DNA from: Heteronotia binoei
Lineage: Eukaryota
Reading direction: 5' to 3'
Length of the DNA: 64,000 nt
NCBI RefSeq assembly: GCF_032191835.1
Contig: NC_083235.1
Span: 18,228,001 to 18,292,000 of the forward strand
Shown here in pieces: positions 1,423 to 59,586 of this stretch. Positions within the stretch are counted from its first letter, which is position 1. Each line of letters starts with the position of its first letter. The notes beneath the pieces are model-generated. The model was not told the DNA's origin and did not search any database. It was given only the letters and a program-made list of their open reading frames with translations. The translations under genes were made by a program, and so were the position numbers.

Positions 1423-1489
<67 letters not shown>

Positions 1490-1895: not shown

Positions 1896-1896
1896 T

Positions 1897-3380: not shown

Positions 3381-3397
3381 CCTGGGGGGGGGCAGCA

Positions 3398-17825: not shown

Positions 17826-18460
17826 TGGGGGGGGGGAGTATTTTGGCTGGAAATATGCCTATCTGACTGAAGTGGGGAAAATTATATAAGAGAAAAGTTC
17901 TCATCAGACATTAGCTGAGTCCAGCTTGAGATCTAAAGATAGATGGACATTAGCCAGTATGGGTGTCTAGCTGCTCTTGAAGCTAGTGAGAAAATTGTCA
18001 GATCAACCTGGGAAGAGAGATATTTATCAGTGATAACTGAGAGAAGAGAAAGAAATTTCCCAGGACAGAGTCTATATAAGCTTCAGAAATTTCCCACCAT
18101 CTTGCTGTCCCCTCAGAGGGTCCAAAGGCAGCTCTGGGGTGATTAGCCACAAGCTTGGTTAAAGATCTTTAACACAAGATTTGCTAACTAAGATTGAGTT
18201 GATAGAATTTAGAGAAGAGAAAGAATGAGAANNNNNNNNNNNNNNNNNNNNNNNNNNNNNNNNNNNNNNNNNNNNNNNNNNNNNNNNNNNNNNNNNNNNN
18301 NNNNNNNNNNNNNNNNNNNNNNNNNNNNNNNNNNNNNNNNNNNNNNNNNNNNNNNNNNNNNNNNNNNNNNNNNNNNNNNNNNNNNNNNNNNNNNNNNNNN
18401 NNNNNNNNNNNNNNNNNNNNNNNNNNNNNNNNNNNNNNNNNNNNNNNNNNNNNNNNNNNN

Positions 18461-19085: not shown

Positions 19086-19298
19086 AACATATGAACATAT
19101 GAAGCTGCCTTATACTGAATCAGACCCTTGGTCCATCAAAGTCAGTATTGTCTTCTCAGACTGGCAGCGGCTCTCCAGTGTCTCAAGCTGTGGTTTTCAC
19201 ACCTATTTGCCTGGACCCTTTTTTGGAGATGCCAGGGATTGAATCTGGGACCTTCTGCTTCCCAAGCAGATGCTCTACCACTGAGCCACCGTCCCTCC
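19086..19298 (-). mobile_element. tRNA-head SINE with CR1-like 3' tail
   Basis: Minus strand reads GTGGCTCAGTGGTAGAGC...GATTCAATCCC (A/B boxes) and ends in a repeated TTCATATG tail. Confidence 0.8.
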
Positions 19299-21836: not shown

Positions 21837-23742
21837 ATGATGAACAACAGTGAGATAGTGGTGACTGAGTACATTTTGCTTGGTCTCTCCAGCTCTCCTG
21901 TAGCTCAGACCATCTTCTTCTGGATTGTTCTGGTTATCTACCTCATCAGCTTAATGGCGAATGGTCTGATGGTTATACTGATCATTACTGACTCCCACCT
22001 CCATACACCCATGTACTTTTTCCTCAGCAACCTCTCCTTCCTCGACATTTGCTTCACCAGCACCACCCTTCCACAGGGCTTGGTTACTTACACCACAGAG
22101 AGAACATCCATTTCCTTCATGGGCTGCATGGCCCAGATATACATTGGCCAGTATTTAGGCACCACGGAGTGTGTCCTCCTGGCTGTCATGGCATACAACC
22201 GCTTTGTGGCCATATGCAGCCCTTTACACTACACAGTGATCATGAGTTGGAAAATTTGTGTCCAAATGGCCATTGGAACTTGGGGTGCTGGTTTTATCCT
22301 GACCCTCATCCCTACCGTCACAGGCCCTAAATGGTTCTGTGGCTCTAATATAATCAACCACTTCACTTGTGAAGCCCAAACAGTTAGCAAGCTGATCTGT
22401 GGAGACACCCACTTTAGTGATATTGTCTCTTTTATCAGAGGCGTACTGGCCCTTATTGTACCATTTACTTTTATCTTGGTGACATATTTGAGAATCAGCC
22501 TGGCAGTTTGGCAGATCTGTTCTGACCAAAAGTTTGTGTCCAAATGGCCATTGGAACTTGGGGTGCTGGTTTTATCCTGACCCTCATCTAGGGTTGCCAA
22601 GTCCAATTTAAAAAATATCTGGGGACTTTGGGAGTGGAGCCAGGAGACACTGGGGTGGAGTTAGGGGGAGGGGGAAAATGGTGCCGGGGAGCGTGGCGAG
22701 CCGCCCTGTCTCGAAGCGGGCGACGTCGCTGCGCTGCTGCCGCCTCTTCTCGGCTCGCCATGGCTGCTCCTCCGAGATGGGCTCAGGCTGGGCCCATCTC
22801 GGAGGAGCAGCTGCGGTGGGTGGGGAGGGGGCGGTAGGGGCACGGCGCGGCGGCATCGCCCACTTCGGGATGGGGCGGCTCGCCATGCTCCTTGGCGCCG
22901 TTTCCCCCCTCCCCCCACTTCCATTTTTTTGGGAGCGGGGGAAGAGGCTGGAAATCCTGGGGTCCCCCACCAGGGCGGGAGGGTTGGGAAGCCTACCCTC
23001 ATCCCTACAGTCATAGGCCCTAAACGGTTCTGTGGCTCTAATATAATCAACCACTTCACTTGTGAAGCCCAATCAGTTAGCAAGCTGATCTGTGGAGACA
23101 CCCACTTTAGTGATATTGTCTCGTTTATCAGCGGCGTACTGGCCCTTATTGTACCATTTACTTTTATCTTGGCGACATATTTGAGAATCGGCCTGGCAGT
23201 TTGGCAGTTCCGTTCTGACCAAAAGTTTGTGTCCAAATGGCCATTGAACTTGGGGTGCTGGTTTTATCCTGACCCTCATCCCTACCGTCACAGGCCCTAA
23301 ACAGTTCTGTGGCTCTAATATAATCAACCACTTCACTTGTGAGGCCCAAACAGTTACCAAGCTGATCTGTGGAAACAACTACTTCAGTGATATTGTCTCT
23401 TTTATCAGCAGTGCACTGGTCCTTATTGTACCATTTACATTTATCTTGGTAATGTATTTGCAAATCATCCTGGCAGTTTGGCAGATCCATTCTGACCAGG
23501 GCTGGAGCAAGGCTGTTTCTACCTGTAGCTCCCACCTAGTTGTTGTTGGCGTCTTCTATGGTTCAGCCATGTCCATGTACCTTCATCCAAAATCCAAGTA
23601 CACCCCTGACAGGGAACAGATGATCTCTCTTCTCTATGATGCTGTGACTCCTATGCTCAGTCCTCTGATATATAGCTTGAGGAACAAGGATGTGAAAGAG
23701 GCACTGTGGAAACTCTTTGGAGGAAAGCGATCTGGACATTAA
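21837..23742 (+). pseudogene. Olfactory receptor pseudogene with triplicated TM4-ECL2-TM5 segment and MITE insertion
   Basis: OR N-half from 21837; a 278-bp unit occurs three times (starts 22251, 22529, 23222); frameshift gives TGA at 22578-22580; C-half open 23248-23742; MAYNRF replaces MAYDRF. Confidence 0.93.
22589..22995. mobile_element. hAT-like MITE (TAGGGTTGCC TIR), GC-rich interior
   Basis: Perfect 8-bp TSD CCCTCATC (22581-22588 and 22996-23003). Confidence 0.88.
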
Positions 23743-27039: not shown

Positions 27040-28080
27040 TAAGCATCAGACCCGAACCAGTTCAAATTAAACTTGGACATTTCCCCTTTTTTCTATGTTA
27101 TTTTGCATCACACCAAAGAGAAAAGTGACCTGAGAATGTTTCAATAGACTGGTCATGTTCCATTGTGCACTGTGGGTTTCATCACTGTTGCCACCATTTT
27201 CCTGTCAGGTTGTTCTAGTCCCTGGAGTTCTAGGAAGACCTGGTGGGATGCAGCCAAACACTTACAATTCCCTGAGCAATGGAGTTTCTTTAAACAAAAA
27301 GCAGAATCACTCTGAAGCAACTAAGAGATCTTCATTACTAAGAACTGAGACTGCTTATTGTGAAATAGCTTAAAGATGAGCTCTGCTCTTAAAATCTTCC
27401 AGCAAAACTCAGTTCCGTGGAGGGGGCTTGCATTCCCCATTTTCTCATTTTTTTCACCCTGAGGACATTCTTATTTTCAGATGCTGTTTTGAAGCAGAGA
27501 TGGAATATAGCATCTGGGGGAAAAAGTTACATCCAAGTTTCTCTACCTGGAGACAAGCTTCAAAAGGTTCAAACCATTCTACTTCTTCCAACCCAGGTGA
27601 GTGTGTATAGTAAGGGTCAAGCTTACTTGTAACACAAGGAGGGTGAAGAAGATCTTTGAGGAATCCATCTTCAGAAGTTTAGTCCCCATCTGCCTCCTGT
27701 ACTCTGCCTTACACTGAATCCATCCATCCGTCCATCAAAGTCAATATAGACAAAATCAGTATAGTGGCCTAAGGACTCAGGTAGAGGTTTTTCAAGTCAA
27801 TACTATCTCATCCTTTTAACTGGAGATGCTAGGGACTGAACCCAAGGTCTTCTGCATGCCAAGCAGAGCTCTACCAGTGAGCCACAGCCCCTCACTGAGA
27901 GTGTTGGAATAGGAGCTAGGAAATTTGGGTTCAAATCTCCACTCTGTCATGAAGCTGAATAGGTGACGTGGGGTATGTCACTTTTTCTCAGCCAAAAGTA
28001 CCTTACAGGATTCTTGTGAGGAAACAATGAGGATGGGAGAACAATGAATGCCTCTCTGAACTCTTGGGTGGAAAGGGAGA
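27040..28080 (+). repeat. OR cassette block A, copy 3
   Basis: Homology to the other copies. Confidence 0.85.
27481..27596 (+). other. Putative non-coding 5' UTR exon of the OR at 30691
   Basis: TTTTCAG| acceptor and CAG|GTGAGT donor; same sites in three other cassettes. Confidence 0.5.
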
Positions 28081-29640: not shown

Positions 29641-30690
29641 TTAAGACCAGCAAAGTGTTTTTTAATAAAAACAAACAAATAAATAATGCATTAATAATAC
29701 TCTCCAAACTCATATAAAATAATGAAAAAAATAAGATAAGTAATAACACTTTGTTGGTCTTAATGGTGCCACTGGACTCTAACTTTGTTGTATTGGTGGT
29801 CTTGCATTAGCTACAAATGATATCTTACATTATAGCAACTCTTCTTTTATTATATGGATGCCAAACTGCTCTTGCAAAGCCCAGTTTATTTAACTAATAG
29901 ATGCAGTACTCATGGATTCATCACAGGAAGAATGCATAGGACTTAAGTGAACAGTGCAGTCTGTGAGTGATCTGCTATTTCTGAAGGATGATGAAACTGA
30001 TATTGGTAAGAAGGAGAGAATCAAAGATTATTTCAGTAACGTGTTCTGAGCATCCCGCAATGTTAGAGCAAAACCCAATAACTTTGGGTATACAATCTCG
30101 GACTTATGCATATGTGAGTGATGATAGTCATAAAAGGTAATAAAAGTTGCCTGCCAATTGGTGTTTCTGCAAGTCTAGGTAAATTACAAAAGGACATGTA
30201 TTTCCTAGTTGTTGTCCACCTAATTTACTTCTCAACATCAATCTGTACTGAGAGTTAGAGCATAAGACTGCAACTAAGCATGACAGCGAGAAGCAACTGT
30301 TTAGGTTTTCAAATTTTATTATAGCCAAAGGAAAGTTTATTTTAGTTGTTGGCCTGCAAGAATACAAAGAACTTGTGATACAGAATGCAATATACACTCT
30401 GTGAAATCATATATTCCAGATATTCCGGCTTGCCTACAACTAAGAGAAGTGTGACTTTTACTCTAATAAAATTTGAAACCCTGAACAAGAAAAGAAACAA
30501 GCAAACTCTGGTCTTTTCCTTTATAGCTTTATTCTTCTTGTAACTTGGTCTGACACAAGCTAGACTTACGACTGTTAACCAGTGAGTGTTCTCTTTGTTC
30601 TCCAGCTACCCATTTTCTTCAGTTCACAGCCTGAACATTAAAACAGTCCCTTCAGACAACTTCTTGCCCAGTGGAGAAGATGTGAAGCAG

Positions 30691-31629
30691 ATGATGAATA
30701 ACAACAGTGAGATAATGGTGACTGAGTTCATTTTGCTTGGTCTCTCAAACCATCCTGTGGCTCAAGCCATCTTCTTCTGGATTGTTCTGGTTATCTACCT
30801 TATCAACTTGCTGGGGAATGGCCTGATGGTTATACTGATCATAACTGACTCCCACCTCCATACCCCCATGTACTTTTTCCTCAGCAACCTCTCCTTCCTA
30901 GACATTTGCTACACCAGCAGCAGTGTCCCTCAGGCCTTGGTTACCTGCACCACAGAGAGAACCACCATTTCCTTCATGGGCTGCATGGCCCAGCTATACA
31001 TCGGCCTGTATTTAGGCACCACGGAGTGTGTCCTTCTGGCTGTCATGGCGTATGACCGTTTTGTGGCCATATGCAGCCCTTTACACTACATGGTGATCAT
31101 GAGTTGGAAAGTCTGTGTCCAAATGGTCATTGGAGCTTGGGGTGCTAGCCTTATGCTGACCCTCATCCCAATAGTCACAGGGTCTAAACAGTTTTGCGGC
31201 TCTAATATCATCAACCATTTCACTTGTGAGATCCAAACAGTTGGCAGGCTGACCTGTGGTGAGTCACACTTCATTGATGTTGTATCTTTTATCAGCGGCG
31301 CAGTGGCCCTTATTGTACCATTTACTTTTATCTTGGTGACGTATTTGAGAATTGGCCTGGCAGTTTGGCAGATCCATTCTGACCAGGGCTGGAGCAAGGC
31401 TCTTTCTACCTGTAGCTCTCACCTCACCGTTGTTGGCATCTTCTATGGTTCAGCCATGTCCATGTACCTTCAACCAAAATCCAAATATACCTCTGACAAG
31501 GACAAGATGGTCTCTGTTTTCTATGGAGCTGTGACTCCTATGCTCAACCCTCTGATATATAGTTTGAGGAACAAGGATGTGAAACGGGCACTTCAGAAAT
31601 TCTTTGGAGGGAAAGGATTCAGATATTAA
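30691..31629 (+). CDS. Olfactory receptor, class II, 312 aa, intact
   Basis: LHTPMYFFLSNLS, MAYDRFVAIC, KALSTCSSHL, PMLNPLIYSLRNKDV; no disruptions. Confidence 0.95.
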   Translation: MMNNNSEIMVTEFILLGLSNHPVAQAIFFWIVLVIYLINLLGNGLMVILIITDSHLHTPMYFFLSNLSFLDICYTSSSVPQALVTCTTERTTISFMGCMAQLYIGLYLGTTECVLLAVMAYDRFVAICSPLHYMVIMSWKVCVQMVIGAWGASLMLTLIPIVTGSKQFCGSNIINHFTCEIQTVGRLTCGESHFIDVVSFISGAVALIVPFTFILVTYLRIGLAVWQIHSDQGWSKALSTCSSHLTVVGIFYGSAMSMYLQPKSKYTSDKDKMVSVFYGAVTPMLNPLIYSLRNKDVKRALQKFFGGKGFRY

Positions 31630-33610: not shown

Positions 33611-34393
33611 AGGAGGTCGGGCGTTTGCTCGCTGGGTTCCCGAGAAGAGCCCGGCGTGCAATAGGGGGCAGATCCGGGTGTCTTTAAAAAACTTCCAAGG
33701 GAGCCTCCAAAGAGTGTAGTGGAGGGGGAAAGCAGCCTCACGGTGACGTCACATAGTGATGTCATTGTGGCACGCAAAACTATAAAAAATCAGGGATCTG
33801 GGACGGCGTGGGGGCGTGGTTCAGGGGTCTGTCTCTAGCAGCAGAACCCTTGGTGCTGGCCCTGGTGGCAGGCGCTGTTCACTGCTGCTCAAAGAGAAAT
33901 GAACTCTGTGCAGAGTTTATTTATTTCACTTATTTTATTTATATCCAATTTTTCTCTGGTGACCCAAAGTGAGCATCCAAGTCAGAGCAGGGATTCAAAC
34001 CTGTGTCTCCCAAATTCTAGGCCAGAGGTGGCCAAACTGTGGCTTGAGAGCCACATGTGGCTCTTTCACCCATATTGTGTGGCTCCCGAAGGTCAAGAAG
34101 GAACTTCATGCAGGCTTACTCTCAAGTAAGCTTGCTTAGCATTGGGATTTCAGTCAGCCTCTGAGCACTCACCCATATTCACATGGATGAATATTTCCAC
34201 CATGTGTGAATTGGGGAAGTAGGTCACCACTGCTGTAGAATGATCTTGCTTTGAGCAGAGGGTTGGACTAGTCCCACTGCATCATCCAGGAAACTGGATC
34301 TCAAGCTGAGCACCCCTCACTGTGCTACGTCAGCATGGCAGGGCCATACAGTTCAGTGATGCAAACAATGGGCATTATTAGATCACCCACTGC

Positions 34394-34785
34394 TAGGGTT
34401 GCAAGTCCCCAGCTTCCCAAAGCGGAGGACACTGTCACGCACGGAGCATGCACGCGACACAATGATGTCACCCGGAAGTGACATCGTCAAAATGGCAGTG
34501 CCCATGTGGGGCTGTTCTAGGTGTTTCCGGGAAAACTCTATGGTTTTTCCTGGACGCTCTAGCCATTTGGGAGGTTAAAACTCTATGGTACCTATGCACC
34601 ATAGAGTTTTGACCTCCCAAATAGCTAGAGAGCCCAGGGAAAACCATAGAGTTTTCCTGGAAACGCCTAGAGCGGCCCTGCATGGGTGCCACCATTTTTA
34701 TGACATCATATCCAATGTGGACCGGCGGGTTGGGAACCTCCTGGGCAGGAGAACCCCCACCCAGACCTGGGGATTGGCAGCCCTA
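34394..34785. mobile_element. hAT-like MITE (TAGGGTTGC TIR) with a long internal hairpin
   Basis: Perfect 8-bp TSD CCCACTGC. Confidence 0.87.
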
Positions 34786-35102
34786 CCCACTGCATCATCC
34801 AGAAAACTAGATATCAAGTTGAGCAGCCTTCACTATACTACAAGCCAACAGGATAGGGTCACATTGTTCGGTGATGCAAACAATGGCCATTATTAGATCA
34901 CCCACTGAATCACCCATAAAACTAAATGTCAAGATGAGAAGCCTTCACTGTGCTAGAAATCAGCATGATAGGGCCCTGCAGTGGTGCAAACAATGGGCAT
35001 TATTGGATCACCCACTGCATCATCCAGCCAACTGAATGTCAAGCTGAGCAGCCCTCATTGTGCTACAAACCTGCAGTGTAGGGCCAGGCAGTTCAGTGAT
35101 GC

Positions 35103-35944
35103 TGTGACGGAACCGGCCCGATTCTGCCTTCAGACCCGGTCCCGTCAGCTCCCTATTGAGTCGCCAACTCCTGGAGGGAGCTATTTCTCCTCCTGCCCCT
35201 TGGGCGCGCTGCCACCACCTGCTCAGTCCCGGGGTTCAGATTGAGAGGAACAGGATTCCCAATCCCCCTCTCCAGCTATGAGGCTAGGCCTCCAGGTCCT
35301 CTGCCACCCTGTACTTGGGTTTCACAGAGACCTTAGCGCTTCTTTGGGGCACCCCTGGAGGATTGGCACCTTATCCAACTGCATGCCTTCCCCCCCTTCA
35401 CCTGGGGCCCCCTTTTTAACACAGCGTGGTCTAAAGCGGTTTGGGGATCTATGTGGTACAGAGTTTGACTGCCAGCATTTTAAACAGAAAAAACATATTT
35501 ATTTAAAAGAGAAAAATATAGGGAAAGAAAAACAAAAACAAAAACAGTTGCATCTACAAAATTAGCACAGCACAGCCCAGCCCAGCAAACAGCATGACAA
35601 AGGAAAGGTGTTTATAAACGCTTTCTACTGTCCCTGGTCTAACCTTGTCCTGTCTTGAGAATTACTTACTTGGTCTGCCTGCCTGGGAGCCTCCCAGGCA
35701 GGAGCCTCCATTGCTCACCACATGCTCGATCGAGCCCCAGTTCAAATCTGCCTTCTCTTCCTGCCTAACACATGCAAGGAACAACAGCACTTCCTGCCTC
35801 TCTAGGAGATTTTCCCCCTAGCGTTGTTGGTTTGGCTCTGGAAGGGAGGGGGGGAGTGAGGGGAAGGCTACCCAGCCTGCTGAGGGATTTACTGATCCCT
35901 GCCAAATGAAGCACCACCACTGACTAAAATGGCATTTCTCCACA
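35103..35944 (-). repeat. 3' LTR (842 bp)
   Basis: Direct repeat of 38648-39489; on the minus strand it follows the PPT AAAGAGGGGGA. Confidence 0.95.
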
Positions 35945-35955
35945 CGTCCCCCTCT

Positions 35956-38499
35956 TTAAATTCTGAGCCGGAGGGGTTGCCTCCTACAGAGGTGACCCCG
36001 TAGCAGAATCCAACCAAACAAGGAGAAACCCATTAACCAAAACATTACACAAACATTCAGGTATTTCTCCAATAATACACAAAGTCCCACAACCTCGGTG
36101 TCCATGTCCTTTCTGGACAAAACGTTGCATTGCTGCATGCCGAAGGAATGTCCAGTCTTTAAGATGTACTCCTCCATCTCCCAGGACCACCTCTGGAGTT
36201 TGGTGCTCTCCCTCCGTTGCTGCTGTTGCTGGGGTGAGTGGTCCATCAAAGGAGGAAATTCCTGGCCCCACATATGAGGTTGGAAACTGCCCAGTTCCCA
36301 CACAGTTGCCTCTTCTTTATCCCTCATTGGTGGAATGTTCCCTCTGTCCACTCTGTCCTCCCAGAAAACTACCTCTGGTGCTGCAAACAATTGCTGTCCC
36401 AGCTTCTTTTTGTCTCCTTCCTTCCTACCTATATGCACCACCCTGGACCTCGCAGAGAATGGCTGTGGTATATTCACCTGCCCCACTTGAACTGCCTTTC
36501 CCATTTTCTCCATAGCCCCCACACAGGTAGCATCGTCCAGGTCATCCACAATCACATGGGGTCCCTCCCATTCCACTTTCCGTTCACCAGTATGAAGTGG
36601 CAGGACATCCATCACACTAGCCCCTGTCTCAGCTTCTGCGAACTCCACTTTCTGGTCCCTTGCCACCTCACACAGTGTTTCCAGCCTAGGGTCACTTTGA
36701 ACCTCAGACAGGAAGAGTTCTGGCTGCCCCAGACTTCCTATCATCTGTTCCTTCAAGCCACCCCTAGTCCCACTGTTTCCAGAACACTCAACCCAAGTTT
36801 GACCTGGGTTCTCCGCCCCCTCAGTTGGTTTTTCAGTGTCAGCCAACTGAGCTCCTTCCTGCCTGGAAGGCTCCACCGCATCCTGCTGCCCTTGCGGAAA
36901 TTGGCACCCCTCTTCCCATTGGGCACACCCTCCTGCAGGGCTTGAGACAGGCTGGTCCTCCCCCTCCCTGGTTGGTGGTGAGGTGGCTTCCCTAAAGTTG
37001 CCTTCCTCCCCCCACCTTCCCCTGAGGGTTTGGCTTGGGTTCTCAGTCCCCTCGGTTGGTTTTTCAGCACTACCCAACTGACCCCCTTCCTGCCTGGAAG
37101 GTCCCACAGCTTCCCAGGATTCCTGTCTGCCCTGCTTCACGACGACCTGTTTTGAGAGCGTCTCGGACGATCCCACTTCCTGATCCACAGCTACTTGGTG
37201 AACCGGTTCCCACCTAAGGCCGCTCAGGACCCCCTTCTGGAACCGCTCCCGTTCCCCCAAGCCTTCAGCTATGTGCTCCTCTGAGCCCACATTAGCCTTG
37301 CTGCTCTCAGAACCTCCTGTGAAATCTCCACTCTCCACCTCGGTCTCTTCAGCTTGCACATCCTTTACGCTAGACAGGTTCCTTTCCTTGCTAGGAACAT
37401 CGACAGCCTCTTGCTGCACTTGGGGAAAGCTACACCCCTCTTCCCCTTGGGAACACCCTCCTCCAGGGCTTGAGATAGGCTGGTCCTCCCCCTCCTGGGT
37501 GACTGCCCTCTCTTCATCCTCAGTAACCTGGGCTATTTCCCCCTCCCTGGTTGGTGGTGAGGTGGCTTCCTTAAAGTTGCCTTCCTCCTCCCACTTTCCT
37601 CTGAGGGTTTGGCTGCTGGTTACAGCATTGATAGAGTACTGGCCAACCAACAAATCCCGGCCCAATAACACTGGAACTGTTTGTTCCTTCATTACCCCAC
37701 ATTCAGAATAGGATTTACCTTCTTGTGGAGCCAAACCCCTGAACTGCTTTCGGGAGTGGTCTGGCCCCAGTTTAAACCTTTTAAATACAGTGGCTTTATA
37801 GGCCGCAAAAGTTATCCCCCCATATTCCATAGGCATGCTGTAATAGATGGCTGAAAGCTCTCCAGTCAGGTTGCTACAGAGGTAAGACATATAGTCCTCC
37901 TCTGCAATCCCCCACTGTTTGGCTGCCCTCTCAAAGTTGGAGAGGTATGTGGAGGGGTCTTCTCCCTCCTTGTACACTGCAAAGTCTTCGGGGGTGACTT
38001 TGATCGTTCCGCTTAGTTCAGCTTCCAGACGTAGCACCTCAAGCTCATGGCGACGTTGCTCTTCCTGCTCCCGTCGGCGGAGCTCAGCTTGTCTCAGCTC
38101 CCTCTCTGCTTGTCTTTCCTCTCTCTCTCGTTCCTCCTCTCTGCGGATCTCAGCTTGTCTCAGCTCTCTCTCTCTTTGTCTTTCCTCCCTCTCTCGTTCC
38201 TCCTGTCTGAGGATCTCATCCCTCTCTGCTTGTCGTTCCTCTCTCTCTCGTTCCTCCCGTCTGCGGTCTCGGTCCGCCTCGATACGCATTCTCTCCAGTT
38301 CCATCTGTAGCCGCAAGGTTGCTTCTGACTGGGTAGGGGGCACTTTTGCAGGTGCCCCTGCATGCTTATGATACTCCAACAGGAGGTCTGTCATATCTAC
38401 TACAGTCATGTTGTCACACTCCAGCTTGTGCTTGGCACACTCTTCCTGGAGCTGTGGCTTTGTCATCTCCAGGATTTCCAGCCTCTTAGCACGCTCCAT
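35956..38499 (-). CDS. 847-aa Gag-derived fusion ORF (coiled coil, capsid/SCAN-like region, remnants of PR, IN and RNase H)
   Basis: Uninterrupted ORF from an ATG ~130 nt after the PBS; motifs YLSNFERAA, VPVLLGRDLL, WEGPHV, DHSP...LQRWSWEMEEY. Confidence 0.8.
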   Translation of the reverse strand: MERAKRLEILEMTKPQLQEECAKHKLECDNMTVVDMTDLLLEYHKHAGAPAKVPPTQSEATLRLQMELERMRIEADRDRRREEREREERQAERDEILRQEEREREERQRERELRQAEIRREEEREREERQAERELRQAELRRREQEEQRRHELEVLRLEAELSGTIKVTPEDFAVYKEGEDPSTYLSNFERAAKQWGIAEEDYMSYLCSNLTGELSAIYYSMPMEYGGITFAAYKATVFKRFKLGPDHSRKQFRGLAPQEGKSYSECGVMKEQTVPVLLGRDLLVGQYSINAVTSSQTLRGKWEEEGNFKEATSPPTREGEIAQVTEDEERAVTQEGEDQPISSPGGGCSQGEEGCSFPQVQQEAVDVPSKERNLSSVKDVQAEETEVESGDFTGGSESSKANVGSEEHIAEGLGERERFQKGVLSGLRWEPVHQVAVDQEVGSSETLSKQVVVKQGRQESWEAVGPSRQEGGQLGSAEKPTEGTENPSQTLRGRWGEEGNFREATSPPTREGEDQPVSSPAGGCAQWEEGCQFPQGQQDAVEPSRQEGAQLADTEKPTEGAENPGQTWVECSGNSGTRGGLKEQMIGSLGQPELFLSEVQSDPRLETLCEVARDQKVEFAEAETGASVMDVLPLHTGERKVEWEGPHVIVDDLDDATCVGAMEKMGKAVQVGQVNIPQPFSARSRVVHIGRKEGDKKKLGQQLFAAPEVVFWEDRVDRGNIPPMRDKEEATVWELGSFQPHMWGQEFPPLMDHSPQQQQQRRESTKLQRWSWEMEEYILKTGHSFGMQQCNVLSRKDMDTEVVGLCVLLEKYLNVCVMFWLMGFSLFGWILLRGHLCRRQPLRLRI

Positions 38500-38627: not shown

Positions 38628-38645
38628 ATCCCACCGCTGCCGCCA
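38628..38645 (-). promoter_or_regulatory. Primer-binding site, tRNA-Leu
   Basis: Minus strand TGGCGGCAGCGGTGGGAT, 17/18 complementary to the vertebrate tRNA-Leu(AAG/TAG) 3' end as recalled (ATCCCACCGCTGCCACCA). Confidence 0.8.
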
Positions 38646-38647
38646 AG

Positions 38648-39489
38648 TGTGGTGGAACCGGCCCGATTCTGCCTTCAGACCCGGTCCCGTCAGCTCCCTA
38701 TTGAGTCGCCAACTCCTGGAGGGAGCTATTTCTCCTCCTGCCCCTTGGGCGCGCTGCCACCACATGCTCAGTCCTGGGGTTCAGATTGAGAGGAACAGGA
38801 CTCCCAATCCCCCTCTCCAGCTATGAGGCTAGGCCTCCAGGTCCTCTGCCACCCTGTACTTGGGTTTCACAGAGACCTTAGTGCTTCTTTGGGGCACCCC
38901 TGGAGGATTGGCACCTTATCCAACTGCATGCCTTCCCCCCCTTCACCTGGGGCCCCCTTCTTAACACAGCGTGGTCTAAAGTGGTTTGGGGATCTATGTG
39001 GTACAGAGTTTGACTGCCAGCATTTTAAACAGAAAAAACATATTTATTTAAAAGAGAAAAATATAGGGAAAGAAAAACAAAAACAAAAACAGTTGCATCT
39101 ACAAAATTAGCACAGCACAGCCCAGCCCAGCAAACAGCATGACAAAGGAAAGGTGTTTATAAACGCTTTCTACTGTCCCTGGTCTAACCTTGTCCTGTCT
39201 TGAGAATTACTTACTTGGTCTGCCTGCCTGGGAGCCTCCCAGGCAGGAGCCTCCATTGCTCACCACATGCTCGATCGAGCCCCATTTCAAATCTGCCTTC
39301 TCTTCCTGCCTAACACATGCAAGGAACAACAGCACTTCCTGCCTCTCTAGGAGATTTTCCCCCTAGCGTTGTTGGTTTGGCTCTGGAAGGGAGGGGGGGA
39401 GTGAGGGGAAGGCTACCCAGCCTGCTGAGGGATTTACTGATCCCTGCCAAATGAAGCACCACCACTGACTAAAATGGCGTTTCTCCACA
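38648..39489 (-). repeat. 5' LTR (842 bp)
   Basis: About ten substitutions from the 3' LTR by eye; no indels seen. Confidence 0.95.
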
Positions 39490-39662
39490 GATGCAAACAA
39501 TGGGCATTATTGCATCACCCACTGCGTCATCCAACCAACTGGATGTCAAGTTGAGCATTCCTCACTCCGCAAAAAGCCAACATGATAGGGCCACACAGTT
39601 CAATGATGCAACAATGGGCATTATTGTAGGACCTCCTCTCTTGTCACCTCTATTTGACCCGA

Positions 39663-41356
39663 GTCAAATTGAGGTGACAAGAGAGGAGGTCCTACAGCTG
39701 ATTGACGAATTAAAAACTAATAAGTCACCAGGTCCAGATGGCATACATCCAAGAGATCTGAAAGAACTCAAAGTTGAACTTGTGGATCTCCTGACAAAAA
39801 TATGTAATCTTTCATTGAAATCTACCTCCGTTCCTGAGGACTGGAAGGTAGCAAATGTCACCCCCATCTTTAAAAAGGGTTCCAGAGGAGATCCGGGAAA
39901 TTACAGGCCAGTCAGTCTGACTTCAATACCGGGAAAGTTGATAGAAACCATTATTGAGGACAGAATGAGTAGGCACATTGATGAACACAAGTTATTGAGG
40001 AAGACTCAGCAAGGGTTCTGTAAGGGAAGATCTTGCCTCACTAACCTGTTATAGTTCTCTGACTGAGGGGGTGAACAAGCATGTGGACAAAGGGGACCCA
40101 ACAGATATTGTTGACTTCTAGAAAGCTGTTGATAAAGTTCCTCATCAAAGCTCCTTAGTAAACTCGAGAGTCATGGAGTAAAAGGACAGGTCCTCTTGTG
40201 GATCAAAAACTGGCTAATTAATAAGAAGCAGAGAGTGAGTATAAATGGGCAGTCTTTGCAGTGGAGGACGGTAAGCAGTGGGATGCCGCAGGGCTCAGTA
40301 CTGGGCCCCATGCTCTTTAACTTGTTCATTAATGATCTGGAGTTGGGAGTAAGCAGTGAAGTGGCCAGGTTTGCAGATGACACTAAATTGTTCAGGGTGG
40401 TGAGAACCAGAGAGGATTGTGAGGCACTCCAAAGGGATCTGTTGAGGATGGGTGAGAGGGCATCAACATGGCAGATGTGGTTCAATGTGGTCAAGTGCAA
40501 AGTAATGCACATTGGGGCCAAGAATCCCAGCTACAAATACAAGTTGATGAACTGGCAGAGACTGACCAAGAGAGAGATCTTGGGGTCGTGATAGATAACT
40601 CACTGAAAATGTCAGGACAATGTGTGATTGCAATAAAAAAGGCCAACGCCATGCTGGGAATTATTAGAAAGGGAATTGAAAACAAATCAGCCAGTATCAA
40701 TGCTCCTGTATAAATCGATGGTGTGGTCTCATTTGGAATACTGTGTACAATTCTGGTCACTGCACCTCAAAAAGGATATTATAGCATTGGAAAAAGTGCA
40801 GAAAAGGGCAACTAGGATAATTAAAGGTTTGGAACACTTTCCCTATGAAGAGAGGTTAAAACGTTTGGGGTTCTTTAGCTTGGAGAAACGTTGACTGCGG
40901 GGTGACATGATAGAGGTTTACAAGATTATGCATGGGATGGAGAAAGTAGAGGAAGTCCTTTTCTCCCTTTCTCACAATACAAGAACTCATGGGCATTCGA
41001 TGAAATTGCTGAGCAGTCAGGTTAAAACGGATAAAAGGAAGTACTTCTTCACCCAAAGGGTGAATAACATGTGGAATTCACTGCCACAGGAGGTGGTGGC
41101 AGCTACAAGCATAGCCAGCTTTAAGTGGGGATTGGATAAAAATACGGAGCAGAGGTCTATCAGNNNNNNNNNNNNNNNNNNNNNNNNNNNNNNNNNNNNN
41201 NNNNNNNNNNNNNNNNNNNNNNNNNNNNNNNNNNNNNNNNNNNNNNNNNNNNNNNNNNNNNNNNNNNNNNNNNNNNNNNNNNNNNNNNNNNNNNNACAGA
41301 GTGTTGGCCTGGATGGGCCTTTGACCTGATCCAACATGGCTTCTCTTATGTTCTTA
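39663..41356 (+). mobile_element. 5'-truncated CR1, decayed, gap in the 3' UTR
   Basis: RT pieces (KSPGPDGIHP, PQGSVLGP, FADDTKL) and a CTCTTATGTTCTT end. Confidence 0.92.
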
Positions 41357-47674: not shown

Positions 47675-48613
47675 ATGATGACCAACAACAGTGAGATAGT
47701 GGTGACTGAGTTCATTTTGCTTGGTCTCTCCAACCATCCTGTGGCTCAGGCCATCTTCTTCTGGATTGTTCTGGTTATCTACCTCATCAACTTGCTGGGG
47801 AATGGCCTGATGGTTATAATGATCATTATCAACTCTCACCTCCATACCCCCATGTACTTTTTCCTCAGCAACCTCTCCTTCCTAGACATTTGCTACACCA
47901 GCAGCAGTGTCCCTCAGGCCTTGGTTACCAGCAGCACAGAGAGAACAACCATTTCCTTCATGGGCTGCATGGCCCAGATACACATCAGCCTGTATCTAGG
48001 CACCACGGAGTGTGTCCTCCTGGCTGTCATGGCATACGACCGCTTTGTGGCCATATGCAGCCCTTTACACTACACAGTGATCATGAGTTGGAAAGTTTGT
48101 GTCCAAATGGCCATTGGAACTTGGGGTACTGGTTTTATCCTGACCCTCATCCCTACCGTCACAGGCCCGAAACGGTTCTGTGGCTCAAATGTCATCAACC
48201 ATTTCAGTTGTGAGGCCCAAACAGTTGGTAAGCTGATCTGTGGTGACACTCACTTAAACAATATTGTTTCTTTTGCCAACAGCATACTGGTCCTTATCGT
48301 ACCATTTACTTTTATCTTGCTAACATATCTGCGAATTGGCCTAGCAGTTTGGCGGATCCGCTCTGATCAGGGCTGGAGCAAGGCTCTTTCTACCTGTAGC
48401 TCTCACCTAGCTGTTGTTGGCATCTTCTATGGTTCAGCCATGGCCATGTACCTTCAACCAAAATCTAAATATACCTCTGACAGAGACAAGATGTTTGCTG
48501 TTTTCTATGGAGCTGTGACTCCCATGCTCAACCCTCTGATATACAGTCTGAGGAACAAGGATGTGAAACGGGCATTGCAGAAACTCTTTGGGGGAAAGCA
48601 TTCCAGATATTAA
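47675..48613 (+). CDS. Olfactory receptor, class II, 312 aa, intact
   Basis: All canonical OR motifs present; no disruptions. Confidence 0.95.
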   Translation: MMTNNSEIVVTEFILLGLSNHPVAQAIFFWIVLVIYLINLLGNGLMVIMIIINSHLHTPMYFFLSNLSFLDICYTSSSVPQALVTSSTERTTISFMGCMAQIHISLYLGTTECVLLAVMAYDRFVAICSPLHYTVIMSWKVCVQMAIGTWGTGFILTLIPTVTGPKRFCGSNVINHFSCEAQTVGKLICGDTHLNNIVSFANSILVLIVPFTFILLTYLRIGLAVWRIRSDQGWSKALSTCSSHLAVVGIFYGSAMAMYLQPKSKYTSDRDKMFAVFYGAVTPMLNPLIYSLRNKDVKRALQKLFGGKHSRY

Positions 48614-51576: not shown

Positions 51577-54500
51577 GTTCAAGTTCAAGTTTATTTATAT
51601 CCCGCCTTTCCCACCGAAGTAGCTCAGGGCGGCTCACAACACATAAAAATCTAACAATAATTTGAATTTAAAACATCTTACACAGTTAAAACAGTAGAAT
51701 AATAAAACATATAAAACATATAACGGCAGTCTATCAGAACTACACTCAGCTTCTAATGCCAGTTAATTATAAGCCTGCCAGAAGAGGGCTGTCTTACAGG
51801 CCCTGCAGAACTGACCAAGGTCCTGCAGGGCCCTCACCTCTTCCGGCAGTTGGTTCCACCAGAAAGGAGCCGTTATGGAGAAGGCCCTGTCCCTGGTGGA
51901 TTGCAGGCGGGCCTCCTTTGGCCCGGAGATAACAAGCAGATTTTGAGATCCCAATCTCAGTACTCTCTGGGGAACATCTGGGGAGAGACAGTCCCTAAGG
52001 TAGGCAGGTCCTAGGCCATATAGGGCTTTAAAGGTAATAACCAGCATCTTGTACTGAACTCAGTATATTATTGGCAGCCAGTGCAGAGTCCGGAGCCCTG
52101 GCCGAATGTGCTCCCATCTTGGGAGCCCCAATAACAACCGGGCCATGGCATTCTGCACTAACTGCAACTTCCGGGTTTGGCACAAGGGCAGCCCCATGTA
52201 GAGGGCATTACAGTAGTCCAACCTCGAGGTGACCGTTGCATGGATCACCATTGCTAGGTCGTCACGCTGCAGGAAAGGAGCCAGCTGCCTCACCCGTCTA
52301 AGATGAAAAAATGCAGATTTAGCAGTGGCTGCTATCTGAGCCTCCATTGTTAAGGAAGGCTCCAATAGTGCCCCCAAACTCCTGACCTTGTGCGCCGCTG
52401 TCAGTGGCGCACCGTCAAAAACTGGCAGGGGGATTTCCCCTCCCAGAACACGACGACCCAAGCAAAGGACCTCTGTCTTCGCTGGATTTAGCCTCAGCCC
52501 GCTCAGCCTGAGCCACCTGGCCATGGTTTGTAACGACCGGTCCAAGTTTTCTGGGATGCAGGCCAGCCATCCATAAGCAGATAGAAAATATTGGATTTAT
52601 ATCCCACCCTCCACTCCGAAGAGCCTCAGAGCAGCTCACAATCTCCTTTACCTTCCTCCCCCACAACAGACACCCTGTGAGGTGGCTGGGGCTGGAGAGG
52701 GCTCTCACAGCAGCTGCCCTTTCAAGGACAACCTCTGCCAGAGCTATGGCTGACCCAAGGCCATGCCAGCAGGTGCAAGTGGAGGAGTGGGGAATCAAAC
52801 CTGGTTCTCCCAGATAAGAGTCTGCACACTTAACCACTGCACCAAACTGGCTGGTGACAACCCAGCCCATACCTTCGGGCAATCTGGGCAAGGGGGCGCA
52901 TATAGATGTTAAATAACATCGGGGAGAGAACCGCTCCTTGAGGCACTCCGCAATCAAGCGTGTGTCTCCGGGTCAGCTCACCCCCAATCGCAACCCTTTG
53001 TCCCCGACTCTCAAGGAAAGAGGAAAGCCATTGTAAGGCCAACCCCTGAATCCCCGCGTCAGCGAGGTGGCAGGTCAGTAGCCGATGGTCGACCGTGTCG
53101 AACGCTGCTGACAGGTCCAACAACATCAGCACCGCCGAGCCGCCCCGGTCCAGATGCCGTTGAAGGTCATCTACCAGGGCAACCAACACCGTCTCCGTCC
53201 CATGGCCCAGGCGAAAGCCGGACTGAAGGGGATCAAGGATGGAAGCATCCTCCAGGAAACTCTGTAGCTGCATCGCCACTGCCCTCTCGATAAGTTTGCC
53301 CAAAAAGGGCAAGTTCGAGACTGGCTGGTAGTGTACCAATGCGGCCGGTTCTAATGTTGTTTTTTTCAAGAGGGGGCGGACCACCGTCTCTTTAAGCGGT
53401 GTTGGAAAGTGCCCCTCCCTCAGGGATCAATTTATGATATCCCGTACAGGATATCTAAGCTCCCTCTGGCAGGATTTAATCAGCCAGGAAGGGCATGGGT
53501 CCAAATTGCAAGTTGTTGGGTGTGCAGATAAGAGGATCCTGTCAACTTCCTCCAGGCTGAGAGCACTGAAACCATCCAGAACATGATCCGAAGACAGGCA
53601 CGGTTCCTTGGGTTCGCAAACTGTCTCTAATATGGCAGGGAGGTCGCGGCAGAGTGACGCGATCTTATCCGCAAAAAAATTTGCAAAAGCCTCACAGCCA
53701 ATCTCCAATTCATTAGAATTTGGTCTGCCTTGTGGCAGCGTTGTAAGATTCCGAATTATATTGAATAGTTGTGCCGGGCGCGAAATTGCAGATGCAATCT
53801 TAGCCGCAAAGTATGTTTTCTTTGCAGTTTTGACTGCCATCTCATAGGACTTCATAATCTCTATAAGATGTTCGAGTCGCTTTGTCTCGAATACGCCACC
53901 ATTGCCTCTCTAGTCGTCTGAGTCCCTGTTTTAATTGCCGCAACTCTTGGTTATACCACGGTGTCGGCTTTAAACGCGGGCGCAGAGGAGGCCTAGGTGC
54001 GATCTCATCAATGGCTCTGGAGAGCCTATCATTCCAAGACTCCACCAAATCATCCAAGGAATCGCCAGGGGGCCAGGGATCCCATAGCGCCATCAGGAAC
54101 CGTTCCGGTTCCATCAGGCTCCGCGGGTGAGATAAAATACACTCTCCGCCTAAACAGGTTTGGGGTGGCACATCCACACGAGCCTTGAGGGCATAGTGAT
54201 CCGACCATGGCACTGCTTTAGCAGTTATATTGTTCACTAAAACTCCCGCCGCGAAAACCAGGTCTAACATGTGCCCTGCCTGATGGGTGGGCGTTGTAAC
54301 AATTTGGGAGAGTCCCAGTGTCACCATGGATGACACCAGGTCCATCGCCCAATTGGAGGCCGCGTCATCGGCATGAACATTGAAGTCACCCAAGACCAGA
54401 AGCCTTGGGCACTCCAATGCCCAGCCCGCCGCGGCCTCCATCAGGGATGGAAAGGCACCAGCCGGAGCGTTAGGCAGACAGTACACCAGCCAGATCGCCA

Positions 54501-55030
54501 ACCCCTCCCCACCGTCCCACATCAGACCGGCACATTCAATGCCCTTGATCTCCGGGGCCGGGAGAGCCCGAAAGGAGTAAACCTCTCATATGAATAGTGC
54601 CACTCTCCCCCCCCCACCCGCTAGTCCGCGACTGGTGAAAGACCGAGTATCCCAGGGGGGGCATCTGGGTGAGAGCTACAGTCTCCCCATTGTGCACCCA
54701 GGTCTCGGTCACGCATGCCAGGTCCACATCCTGCTCTAGTTGGAATTCCCGAAGGGTAGCGGTCCTATTATTGATGGAACTGGCATTACATAACACCAGT
54801 GACAGAGGCGAGTAATTTCACCTGGCCCCACTACCTGTCACCATCGGGATGGGATGCAGGCTGGAAGGTGGCCGAGCACTGTCATGTCTCAGCCTCCTTC
54901 CCTTATAATTCTGCCTGTTCCCACCGTCATACCTTCCCCTCCTCAGGAGTACAGGAATCCCCAGGCCCGTCATTTCCTACTGGTGGCCACCAGCTCCTCG
55001 ACTGGCAGAATAGTTATACCTATATCTAGT
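51577..55030 (-). mobile_element. L2 LINE, most of ORF2, decayed
   Basis: APE (LCNASSINN, CVTETW, LGDFNVH), RT (DLSAAFDTVDH, PQGAVLSP), C-terminal LDYCNAL and LHWLPI; (TTGAAC)n tail; 5' limit approximate. Confidence 0.92.
52585..52852 (-). mobile_element. Full-length tRNA/L2-tail SINE inserted in the L2 RT
   Basis: Family match; no TSD; host bases missing at the site. Confidence 0.88.
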
Positions 55031-59465: not shown

Positions 59466-59586
59466 AACTGTTAACCCATGTGTGTTCTTTTTGTTTTTCA
59501 ATGACCCATTTTATCCAATTCACAGCCTAGACATTAAATCAATCTCCTCACACAGCTCCTTGCCCAGTGGAGAAGATGCGAAGCAG

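What the first reader, a model, noticed from the sequence alone, without database searches (positions are those of the whole stretch)
35956..38499. Enzyme-less Gmr1-like LTR element keeps one 847-aa ORF through several in-frame deletions
Seen in one frame: Gag N-terminus, E/R coiled coil and capsid-like YLSNFERAAKQW...FKRFKLGPDHSRKQFRG. It then jumps to the protease tail (VPVLLGRDLL) and an acidic linker. Next come an integrase-start remnant (VQSDPRLETL), the integrase GPY/F module (RKVEWEGPHVIVDDL) and RNase H remnants (VWELGSFQPHMWGQEF..MDHSP, LQRWSWEMEEY, NVLSRK). The PR active site, IN core and RT are absent. Established: PR-IN-RT/RH order defines Gmr1-like Gypsy elements, whose gag gave rise to the SCAN domain. 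Inference: at least three junctions stayed in frame (1-in-3 chance each) and the remnants are diverged yet stop-free. This suggests a mobile non-autonomous family under selection to make this protein, e.g. a packaging helper, a dominant-negative Gag or a domestication intermediate.
Basis: partly seen in the sequence, partly recalled or inferred. Interest (0 to 1): 0.78.

Follow-up and report, generated by a model that had tools for sequence, protein, structure and literature searches.

The report
Enzyme-less Gmr1-like retrotransposon with open ORF
This is a recently inserted, cut-down Gmr1-like LTR retrotransposon in what looks like a gecko genome; its single 847-codon gene joins a well-kept front half of the capsid protein to badly decayed enzyme leftovers that have stayed free of stops, so the reading frame itself seems to have been preserved.

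Summary
An 847-aa ORF (35956-38499, minus strand) fills the 2.7-kb interior of a complete LTR element. The element has 842-bp LTRs that are 98.8% identical, TG..CA ends, a 5-bp target duplication, a PBS and a PPT.

Against its closest relative, a Sphaerodactylus gecko Gag-Pol model (P0001), the ORF maps collinearly and entirely in one frame. The order is Gag N-terminus, coiled coil, capsid NTD, protease tail, a duplicated acidic linker carrying the integrase lead-in, the integrase SH3/GPY-F module, and the C-terminal half of RNase H. The capsid CTD (SCAN), zinc knuckle, protease DTG, integrase core, RT and the first half of RNase H are missing.

Capsid NTD and protease tail evolve at the same rate as in P0001. 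The integrase and RNase H leftovers evolve much faster (ML branch 1.49 vs 0.02) and have lost about half of the family-invariant residues. Even so they carry no stop or frameshift (simulated chance about 0.015 for 154 codons).

This decay far exceeds the LTR divergence, so the lineage was copied in trans while already enzyme-less. Sister copies could not be obtained. Closest analogues are mouse IAP 1-delta-1 and plant TR-GAG elements.

The parts
38648..39489 (-). 5' LTR (842 bp, TG..CA ends; TATA-like at 39161 and AWTAAA at 39048 in element orientation)
   Evidence: 98.8% identical to 35103-35944 with no gaps; motif scan
35103..35944 (-). 3' LTR (842 bp)
39490..39494 (.). Target-site duplication GATGC, copy next to the 5' LTR
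   Evidence: Identical 5-mer at 35098-35102. The joined flanks recreate an intact paralogous unit of the surrounding 110-115-nt tandem repeat
35098..35102 (.). Target-site duplication GATGC, copy next to the 3' LTR
38628..38645 (-). Primer-binding site, 18 nt starting TGG, 2 nt after the 5' LTR
   Evidence: Read directly. The resemblance to the 3' end of a tRNA-Leu is from memory and was not tested
35945..35957 (-). Polypurine tract abutting the 3' LTR; overlaps the stop codon by 2 nt
35956..38499 (-). Single 847-aa ORF, Gag N-half fused in frame to pol remnants
38359..38499 (-). Gag N-terminal three-helix domain (aa 1-47), SAP-like
   Evidence: pLDDT mostly above 90; weak Pfam SAP hit, E 0.0044; aligns to P0001 from residue 1
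38014..38331 (-). E/R-rich single long helix or coiled coil (aa 57-162), containing in-frame 66-nt and 54-nt tandem repeats
37696..38004 (-). Capsid N-terminal domain (aa 166-268), conserved
   Evidence: 71% identical to P0001; balanced relative rates; 12 of 12 conserved columns kept; top fold matches are dArc1, PNMA2 and Arc capsids
37687..37704 (-). Junction 1 (aa 266-271): capsid NTD joined to the protease tail at a shared VMK microhomology; removes SCAN/CA-CTD, zinc knuckle and protease DTG
37615..37695 (-). Protease C-terminal tail with the LLGRD motif (aa 269-295), conserved
   Evidence: 73.5% identical to P0001; balanced relative rates
37126..37614 (-). Acidic linker copy A plus a degenerate integrase lead-in (aa 296-458)
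   Evidence: Matches P0001 526-702; composition
36631..37125 (-). Duplicated linker modules and copy B, ending in the integrase lead-in motif (aa 459-623)
36412..36630 (-). Integrase C-terminal SH3/GPY-F remnant (aa 624-696), decayed
   Evidence: Matches P0001 1021-1094, where Pfam finds Integrase_p58_C and SH3_Tf2-1; 25:3 and 25:0 unique changes; 8 of 14 conserved columns kept
36340..36411 (-). Unassigned 24 aa between the integrase and RNase H remnants (aa 697-720)
   Evidence: No significant match; a possible faint RNase H N-half alignment
36097..36339 (-). RNase H C-terminal half remnant (aa 721-801), decayed, with two 2-codon in-frame gaps
35959..36096 (-). 46-aa hydrophobic/basic tail beyond the point where P0001 ends; no homolog found

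Best explanation
This is a young insertion of a non-autonomous Gmr1-like (Ty3/gypsy-type) LTR retrotransposon. Its nearest relatives are in geckos.

Shown:
- The element is structurally complete for replication in cis (LTRs, PBS, PPT, target duplication) but encodes no protease active site, integrase core, RT or whole RNase H.
- Its one ORF is an in-frame mosaic: Gag N-terminal domain, coiled coil, capsid NTD, protease tail, duplicated linker with the integrase lead-in, integrase SH3, and the RNase H C-half.
- Capsid NTD and protease tail are as conserved as in the closest relative.
- The integrase and RNase H pieces have decayed about as fast as unconstrained sequence.

Inferred:
- That decay (about 0.3 substitutions per site) is roughly 50 times the per-copy divergence since insertion. 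The lineage therefore went on being reverse-transcribed and integrated by a helper element's enzymes long after it lost its own.
- The integrase/RT deletions are old. The deletion that removed capsid CTD, zinc knuckle and protease core is recent, so for most of its history the lineage was probably a Gag-protease element dragging a decaying tail.
- Throughout, stops and frameshifts were purged although amino-acid changes were not. This points to element-level selection for uninterrupted translation to the natural end of the ORF just before the PPT.
- The likeliest reasons are a translation-dependent effect in cis, as reported for the mouse IAP 1-delta-1 gag-pol fusion, or avoidance of RNA decay triggered by a premature stop followed by a long 3' UTR. 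Which of these applies is not shown.
For: Structure:
- LTR pair, TG..CA ends, 5-bp duplication, PBS, PPT, and a paralogous empty site.
- Collinear one-frame homology to P0001.
- Relatives show SCAN plus PR-IN-RT-RH.
- Catalytic motifs are absent.

Constraint split:
- Identity to P0001: Gag NTD 71%, PR tail 73.5%, SH3 46%, RH 42%.
- Tajima tests, ORF-unique vs P0001-unique: Gag 9:10 and 9:13, PR tail 6:4 to 3:5, SH3 25:3 and 25:0, the RNase H alignment block (aa 701-810) 38:3.
- Conserved columns kept: Gag 12/12, SH3 8/14, RH 10/19.
- ML branch lengths: Gag 0.231 vs 0.251; SH3+RH 1.487 vs 0.022.
- P0001's RNase H is 66-72% identical to alligator copies, while the ORF's is only 37-38%.

Open frame:
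- 0 stops in frame against 33 and 47 in the other sense frames.
- Simulated P(no stop) at d = 0.3 is 0.015 for the 154 remnant codons and about 2e-7 extrapolated to all 576 downstream codons. It is 0.61 for the 0.6% expected since insertion.
- The only indels in the remnants are multiples of 3.
- No out-of-frame homology and no one-directional editing spectrum.

Analogue: the IAP 1-delta-1 gag-pol fusion acts in cis (PMC6466679).
Against: - Only one copy was available. No sister copies, no autonomous partner and no relative's DNA could be examined, so there is no real dN/dS and no copy-level test of ORF retention.
- The neutral divergence (about 0.3) is inferred from amino-acid decay, not measured at synonymous sites.
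- The finding was picked because it has a long ORF, which is an ascertainment bias.
- Stops in the last 80 or so codons would create only a short 3' UTR, so the RNA-decay idea does not explain the open RNase H remnant. Taken alone that remnant is not improbable (about 0.12, extrapolated from the per-codon stop rate).
- Conservation of Gag and the PR tail could come from recombination with a co-packaged helper RNA rather than from selection on this element's own protein.
- P0001 is a gene model that itself lacks RT, and its DNA could not be checked.
Confidence: 0.65

Rival explanations
1. Neutral relic. This is a dead deletion derivative whose ORF is open only because the copy is young, and the in-frame junctions are luck. 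Nothing selects for the frame.
For: The LTRs are 98.8% identical, and the chance of no new stop since insertion is about 0.6. Junction 1 may be private to this copy. No second copy lies in the window or in any searchable collection. The finding was chosen for having a long ORF.
Against: The SH3 and RH remnants have lost 47-53% of family-invariant residues and sit on a branch about 70 times longer than the sister's. That decay must predate the insertion, yet it left no stop (P about 0.015 for 154 codons) and only in-frame indels. Four or more junctions are all in frame, about 1% by chance.
Confidence: 0.12
2. The whole fusion protein is functional as protein, for example as a packaging helper or a dominant-negative Gag that poisons helper capsids, or it is on its way to host domestication. 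Its remnants would have been repurposed and then kept by amino-acid-level selection.
For: The capsid NTD, N-terminal domain and coiled coil are intact and predicted with confidence. The internal linker duplicates give NG86 dN/dS of 0.43 over 90 codons. The ORF is open to the end.
Against: The capsid CTD/SCAN dimerisation domain and the RNA-binding zinc knuckle are gone. The remnants are unrecognisable to Pfam except for one sub-threshold RNase H hit, and they changed at positions invariant from frogs to alligators. Intact young LTRs, a target duplication and a position inside a LINE argue against a host gene. The dN/dS sample is tiny, and NG86 biases it downward.
Confidence: 0.12
3. The apparent constraint on Gag NTD and the protease tail is not selection on this element's own product. 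It reflects repeated template-switch recombination with co-packaged helper RNA, which keeps refreshing the 5' part.
For: Only the 5' block (Gag NTD and PR tail) is sister-like, and it changes abruptly to decayed sequence further 3'. Junction 1 sits at a microhomology typical of template switching.
Against: This does not explain why the decayed 3' part stays open. It cannot be separated from purifying selection without the helper's sequence. It is compatible with the main explanation rather than exclusive of it.
Confidence: 0.2

Closest known systems
Gmr1-like Ty3/gypsy LTR retrotransposons of deuterostomes; closest protein is Sphaerodactylus townsendi LOC125435398 (P0001)
   Same: LTR, PBS and PPT architecture. 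Gag with an N-terminal domain, coiled coil and capsid NTD. Remnant order is PR, then IN, then RH. Sister to P0001 with 100% bootstrap in a Gag+SH3+RH tree. The domain order and the link between SCAN and the capsid CTD are as described in bioRxiv 10.1101/2025.03.03.638093.
   Different: No SCAN/CA-CTD, zinc knuckle, PR active site, IN zinc finger or core, RT, or first half of RNase H. The linker is duplicated. The surviving IN and RH pieces are heavily decayed.
Mouse IAP 1-delta-1 elements
   Same: A non-autonomous LTR element made by an internal deletion that fuses gag to pol in one ORF. It depends on helper proteins in trans. The fusion's translation is reported to help retrotransposition in cis (PMC6466679).
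   Different: IAP is a class II endogenous retrovirus with one 1.9-kb deletion. Here there are at least four junctions in a Gmr1-like element, most of the pol part is decayed beyond recognition, and no cis effect has been tested.
TR-GAG and GAG/PROT-retaining non-autonomous LTR retrotransposons of plants
   Same: LTR elements that keep a Gag (or Gag-protease) ORF, lack the enzymes, and sometimes carry partly decayed pol fragments (PMC13570524).
   Different: Those are plant Ty1/copia and Ty3/gypsy lineages. Here Gag is only its N-terminal half, and the ORF reads on through the decayed pol fragments to the normal end of pol.
Gag-derived host genes (SCAN-domain proteins, Arc, PNMA, PEG10)
   Same: Capsid-type fold in the N-terminal half; top structural matches are dArc1, PNMA2, Arc and PEG10.
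   Different: This copy keeps young LTRs and a target duplication, lies inside a LINE, and lacks the very SCAN domain that hosts co-opted.

Membership tests
Gmr1-like Ty3/gypsy LTR retrotransposons | pol order PR-IN-RT-RH (integrase upstream of RT/RNase H) | tested here: met
   The remnants lie in the order PR tail (aa 269-295), IN lead-in (aa 596-623), IN SH3 (aa 624-696), RH C-half (aa 721-801). Full-length relatives P0013, P0021 and P0030 show PR-IN-RT-RH. RT itself is deleted, so the order is shown only for PR, IN and RH.
Gmr1-like Ty3/gypsy LTR retrotransposons | Gag whose capsid C-terminal domain is SCAN-like | tested here: not met
   No Pfam SCAN hit in the ORF. The ORF stops matching P0001 at residue 250, while SCAN spans 227-314 there. 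The domain was deleted in this copy and is present in the sister and all relatives.
Gmr1-like Ty3/gypsy LTR retrotransposons | LTRs with TG..CA ends, short target duplication, PBS and PPT | tested here: met
Gmr1-like Ty3/gypsy LTR retrotransposons | Placement within the clade by RT phylogeny | not testable with these tools
   RT is absent. As a substitute, the Gag+SH3+RH tree puts the ORF sister to P0001 (bootstrap 100) among SCAN-bearing PR-IN-RT-RH proteins.
Non-autonomous Gag-retaining LTR retrotransposons (TR-GAG type) | Terminal repeats, PBS and PPT with a Gag ORF and no enzymatic domains | tested here: met
   Gag is only partial (no CA-CTD, no zinc knuckle).
Non-autonomous Gag-retaining LTR retrotransposons (TR-GAG type) | A multi-copy family mobilised by a helper | not testable with these tools
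   No other copy in the window. Trans-mobilisation is inferred from decay far exceeding LTR divergence.
IAP 1-delta-1-type gag-pol fusion elements | Internal deletion that fuses gag to pol in frame in a helper-dependent element | tested here: met
IAP 1-delta-1-type gag-pol fusion elements | Fusion protein or its translation promotes retrotransposition in cis | not testable with these tools
   Needs an experiment. Only indirect support exists, from the stop-free decayed tail.
IAP 1-delta-1-type gag-pol fusion elements | Belongs to the IAP (class II ERV) lineage | tested here: not met
   All homologs are Gmr1-like/SCAN-bearing gypsy-type proteins. This is an analogue, not a member.
Domesticated gag-derived host gene | LTRs lost or decayed, and a fixed host locus under purifying selection | tested here: not met
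   LTRs are 98.8% identical, with an intact target duplication, inside a LINE's 5' repeats.

The most novel reading that the evidence does not exclude
A long-lived lineage of enzyme-less Gmr1-like elements survives only while ribosomes can read from the Gag start to the natural end of pol. Hundreds of codons would then be kept open as meaningless 'spacer' coding sequence, through a cis requirement for translation or a shield against RNA decay. If general, this would be a rule for how single-ORF LTR elements give rise to successful parasites of their own kind, and it would explain why similar Gag/IN-tail/RNase H layouts turn up in frog and gecko gene models.
Probability: 0.25. Interest if true: 0.7.

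Novelty: new variant of a known kind. Interest (0 to 1): 0.45.

Why it matters
Non-autonomous LTR elements are usually described as either non-coding (TRIM, LARD) or Gag-only. This copy shows a third state in a vertebrate Gmr1-like lineage: one ORF with a conserved capsid front, and a long tail whose sequence is free to drift while its frame is not.

If sister copies confirm this, the element gives a natural test of whether translation itself, rather than the protein made, determines which defective retroelements get copied. So far that idea rests mainly on the mouse IAP 1-delta-1 experiments. It also adds squamate material to the history of the capsid lineage that gave rise to the SCAN domain.

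Tried and rejected
- **PDB sequence search.** It returned only poly-ubiquitin. Each repeat scores about 4 bits, and single ubiquitin has E around 1. This is a summed chance match and was rejected.
- **Pfam.** On the whole ORF and on four pieces it found nothing except a sub-threshold RT_RNaseH hit and low-complexity noise. Pairwise homology was needed instead.
- **Compensated frameshifts as the source of remnant divergence.** Rejected: tblastn of nine relatives against all six frames of the interior gives significant matches only in the ORF frame.
- **One-directional RNA or DNA editing that avoids stops.** Rejected: the inferred single-step changes are spread over all types (T>C 9, G>A 8, T>G 7.8, A>G 7.3 and so on), and 28 of 86 changed residues need two or more nucleotide changes.
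- **Remnants from a divergent but functional lineage.** Rejected: about half of the columns that are at least 90% conserved in all functional relatives are changed.
- **dN/dS between the two internal linker copies.** The value is 0.43 on 90 codons. The sample is too small and the duplication age is unknown, so this is inconclusive.
- **Search for sister copies.** None in the window. No full-length relative other than P0001 in 5.8 billion protein clusters. Nothing in viral or metagenome contigs.
- **The look-up of encoding contigs was closed.** The DNA under P0001, P0005, P0011 and the Logan fragments could not be read.
- **Saito et al. 2008 (PMC2413153)** is not held and is cited only through the review PMC6466679.
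- **Literature search for lizard TRIM-Gag fusions** found no report.
Full report
**What is there.** The minus strand carries an ATG-to-TAA ORF of 847 codons at 35956-38499. It is flanked by two 842-bp direct repeats, 35103-35944 and 38648-39489, which differ at 10 positions with no gaps, 98.8% identity.

In element orientation the repeats begin with TG and end with CA. An 18-nt primer-binding site starting TGG lies 2 nt after the 5' LTR. A 13-nt polypurine tract abuts the 3' LTR and overlaps the stop codon. Both ends are bordered by the 5-mer GATGC.

The element landed in the 110-115-nt tandem repeats at the 5' end of a CR1-type LINE. Joining the two flanks after removing one GATGC recreates an intact neighbouring repeat unit, which serves as a paralogous empty site. 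The 148-nt leader has no upstream ATG, and the LTR holds a TATA-like box and a poly(A) signal in the expected order. The interior is 2703 bp, and the ORF fills almost all of it.

**Is the ORF more than chance?** Its frame has no stop. The other two sense frames have 33 and 47 stops, and the antisense frames have 17 to 29.

**What the ORF is made of.** Pfam alone is nearly blind to it, giving only a sub-threshold RT_RNaseH match at aa 731-778 (E 0.002-0.009).

A phmmer scan of aa 166-847 against 1.84 billion representative proteins gave 66 hits. The best by far is P0001 (E 1e-99), a 1273-aa predicted protein of the gecko Sphaerodactylus townsendi. Shorter related fragments come from Gekko kuhli, Eublepharis macularius and alligator.

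P0001 contains SCAN, a CCHC knuckle, a protease DTG, the integrase zinc finger, core and SH3, and RNase H. More distant full-length hits (P0013, P0021, P0030) have SCAN followed by PR, IN, RT and RH, which is the Gmr1-like order. That order, and the identity of SCAN with the capsid C-terminal domain, are described in bioRxiv 10.1101/2025.03.03.638093.

BLASTP of the ORF against P0001 gives a collinear mosaic:

| ORF residues | P0001 residues | Segment |
|---|---|---|
| 1-271 | 1-250 | Gag N-terminus, coiled coil, capsid NTD |
| 252-458 | 487-702 | Protease tail, acidic linker, integrase lead-in |
| 489-623 | 526-691 | Second copy of the linker |
| 624-696 | 1021-1094 | Integrase SH3/GPY-F |
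| 721-801 | 1189-1273 | C-terminal half of RNase H |

tblastn of nine relatives against all six frames of the interior finds significant matches only in the ORF frame. The ORF has no CCHC, D[TS]G, YxDD or DAS motif.

An AlphaFold model of aa 1-300 (mean pLDDT 88.9) shows three parts: a three-helix N-terminal domain, one long helix over aa 57-162, and a helical bundle over aa 182-255. Its best PDB matches are retrotransposon-type capsids, namely dArc1, PNMA2, Arc and PEG10. Probabilities are 0.96-0.98 but E-values are weak (0.04-0.06), because the long helix dilutes the score.

- Only the capsid N-terminal domain survives.
- The SCAN domain and zinc knuckle are deleted as well.
- The linker is duplicated.
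- There are at least four in-frame junctions.

**Two kinds of segment.** Identity to P0001 is 71% in the capsid NTD and 73.5% in the protease tail. It is only 46% in the integrase SH3 and 42% in the RNase H half. The low values are not ordinary lineage divergence. P0001's RNase H half is 80% identical to a Eublepharis fragment and 66-72% identical to alligator copies, whereas the ORF's is 36-38% identical to those.

| Test | Capsid NTD | Protease tail | Integrase SH3 | RNase H half |
|---|---|---|---|---|
| Identity to P0001 | 71% | 73.5% | 46% | 42% |
| Tajima counts, ORF-unique: P0001-unique | 9:10, 9:13 | 6:4 to 3:5 | 25:3, 25:0 | 38:3 (over aa 701-810) |
| Columns ≥75% conserved that are kept | 12/12 | n/a | 8/14 | 16/34 |

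Further points:
- The SH3 and RNase H Tajima tests give p below 1e-4 with close outgroups and p of 0.003 or lower with distant ones.
- Among RNase H columns at least 90% conserved in relatives, the ORF keeps 10 of 19, and no functional relative keeps fewer than 89%.
- On a fixed tree where the ORF and P0001 are sisters (bootstrap 100), the terminal branches are 0.231 and 0.251 substitutions per site for the capsid NTD. For SH3 plus RNase H they are 1.487 and 0.022.

The front of the protein is as constrained as in the relative, and the enzyme leftovers have drifted essentially freely.

**How much drift, and what it implies.** In a simulation on the element's own codons, unconstrained substitution at 0.3 per site changes 47.5% of residues. 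This matches the 47-53% loss at family-invariant columns. At that level the chance that the 154 remnant codons hold no stop is 0.015, and extrapolated to all 576 codons downstream of junction 1 it is about 2e-7.

The only length differences in the remnants are multiples of three: two 2-codon gaps in RNase H and one 1-codon gap after the SH3. By contrast, the LTRs imply only about 0.6% change per copy since insertion, for which an open frame is unremarkable (P about 0.6).

Two inferences follow:
1. The decay predates this insertion. The lineage was reverse-transcribed and integrated by someone else's enzymes after it had lost its own, so it is a mobile non-autonomous lineage.
2. During that history stops and frameshifts were removed although amino-acid changes were not.

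Compensated frameshifts and one-directional editing do not explain this.

**Order of events.** Both sides of junction 1 (capsid NTD and protease tail) are still sister-like with balanced rates. The protease tail's 9 differences in 34 residues are unlikely (P about 0.01) if it had drifted as long as the SH3 and RNase H pieces. The simplest reading has two stages:
1. The integrase-core and RT deletions are old.
2. The loss of capsid CTD, knuckle and protease core is recent. It occurred at a shared VMK microhomology and may even date from the reverse transcription that made this copy.

For most of its history the lineage would then have been a Gag-protease element with a decaying but open tail. 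That resembles the plant families that retain only GAG/PROT domains, some of which also carry decayed pol fragments (PMC13570524).

**Mechanism.** Why the frame is kept is not shown. The nearest precedent is the mouse IAP 1-delta-1 element. It has a 1.9-kb deletion that creates a gag-pol fusion ORF, depends on helpers in trans, and has a fusion reported to act in cis to promote retrotransposition (PMC6466679).

A second possibility rests on general knowledge of long-3'-UTR RNA decay and was not tested here. A premature stop in an element whose ancestors always terminated just before the PPT would expose a long 3' UTR and destabilise the genomic RNA. This explanation cannot account for the open last 80 codons. 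Taken alone, though, those codons are not improbable (about 0.12, extrapolated from the per-codon stop rate).

A protein-level role for the whole fusion (helper, dominant-negative Gag) is not excluded. It fits poorly with the missing dimerisation and RNA-binding domains and the loss of invariant residues. Domestication is excluded for this copy by its young LTRs and target duplication. Conservation of the 5' block might also reflect recombination with helper RNA rather than selection on the element's own product.

**Limits.**
- Everything rests on one copy and on protein comparisons.
- No second copy exists in the window.
- No other full-length relative appears in the protein collections.
- Viral and metagenome contig scans found nothing.
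Neither sister copies nor the DNA under the gecko and frog gene models could be read, and no true dN/dS could be computed.
- The only codon-level estimate, between the two internal linker copies, is 0.43 on 90 codons and is inconclusive.
- The tRNA-Leu assignment of the PBS is from memory.
- An age of a few million years for the insertion would follow from the 1.2% LTR divergence only under an assumed lizard substitution rate.

**Verdict.** This is a new variant of a known kind: a helper-dependent LTR element that keeps a gag-derived ORF, here in the Gmr1-like lineage of a squamate. Its unusual feature is a long tail whose frame is kept while its sequence drifts. Interest is moderate until sister copies are examined.

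Noticed in passing
P0004 (Hemicordylus capensis LOC128347919) and P0006 (Sceloporus undulatus, named TRIM5-like); not in the window: Lizard gene models that join a TRIM-type RING (P0004 also has a B-box) to a Gmr1-like Gag (capsid NTD, SCAN, CCHC). After the geckos they are the closest relatives of this ORF's capsid NTD, at 39-42% identity. A TRIM fused to a capsid domain would be a candidate restriction factor. No paper describing it was found.
   Followed up: partly
P0005 (Mixophyes fleayi), P0001 (Sphaerodactylus), P0011 (Eublepharis), P0024 (Gekko kuhli); not in the window: Several annotated proteins show similar cut-down layouts. The frog model has Gag, knuckle, protease, integrase C-end and RNase H but no integrase core or RT. 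The gecko models lack the RT core. These could be real recurrent deletions or gene-model splicing; the DNA could not be read.
   Followed up: partly
window 38359-38499 (-), ORF aa 1-47: The Gag N-terminus folds as a confident three-helix unit and gives a weak SAP-domain hit (E 0.0044, below threshold). This may be a nucleic-acid-binding module at the start of Gmr1-like Gag.
   Followed up: partly
window 16086-17126, 21837-22580, 30586-31629, 47675-48613, 59482-60522 (+): A same-strand cluster of olfactory receptor ORFs. The first was confirmed by Pfam 7tm_4 (E 4e-51). The one at 21837-22580 is short (247 aa) and probably broken.
   Followed up: partly
window 19-3547 (+): Pieces of an ordinary Ty3/gypsy element in the usual RT, RNase H, integrase order, split into at least three ORFs. 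It is unrelated to the Gmr1-like element.
   Followed up: partly
window 34273-35102 and 39483-39609; 39491-41329 (+); 4357-6170; 52060-54522 (-): LINE material. 110-115-nt tandem repeats form the 5' end of a CR1-type LINE into which the element inserted. There is a second CR1-like fragment and a separate endonuclease-plus-RT LINE on the minus strand.
   Followed up: partly
window 19224-19296 and 27821-27891 (-): ARAGORN calls tRNA-Pro(GGG) and tRNA-Ala(GGC). With these unusual anticodons inside a repeat-rich receptor cluster, they may be SINE heads or pseudogenes.
   Followed up: no
window 9716-9869, 15622-15756, 18232-18460, 41164-41295: Four runs of N, 132-229 bases long. They were left as they are.
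   Followed up: no
window 35278-35565 and 38823-39110 (+): Each LTR carries the same 95-aa ORF on the strand opposite to the element. The two copies differ by one residue. No homolog was sought.
   Followed up: no
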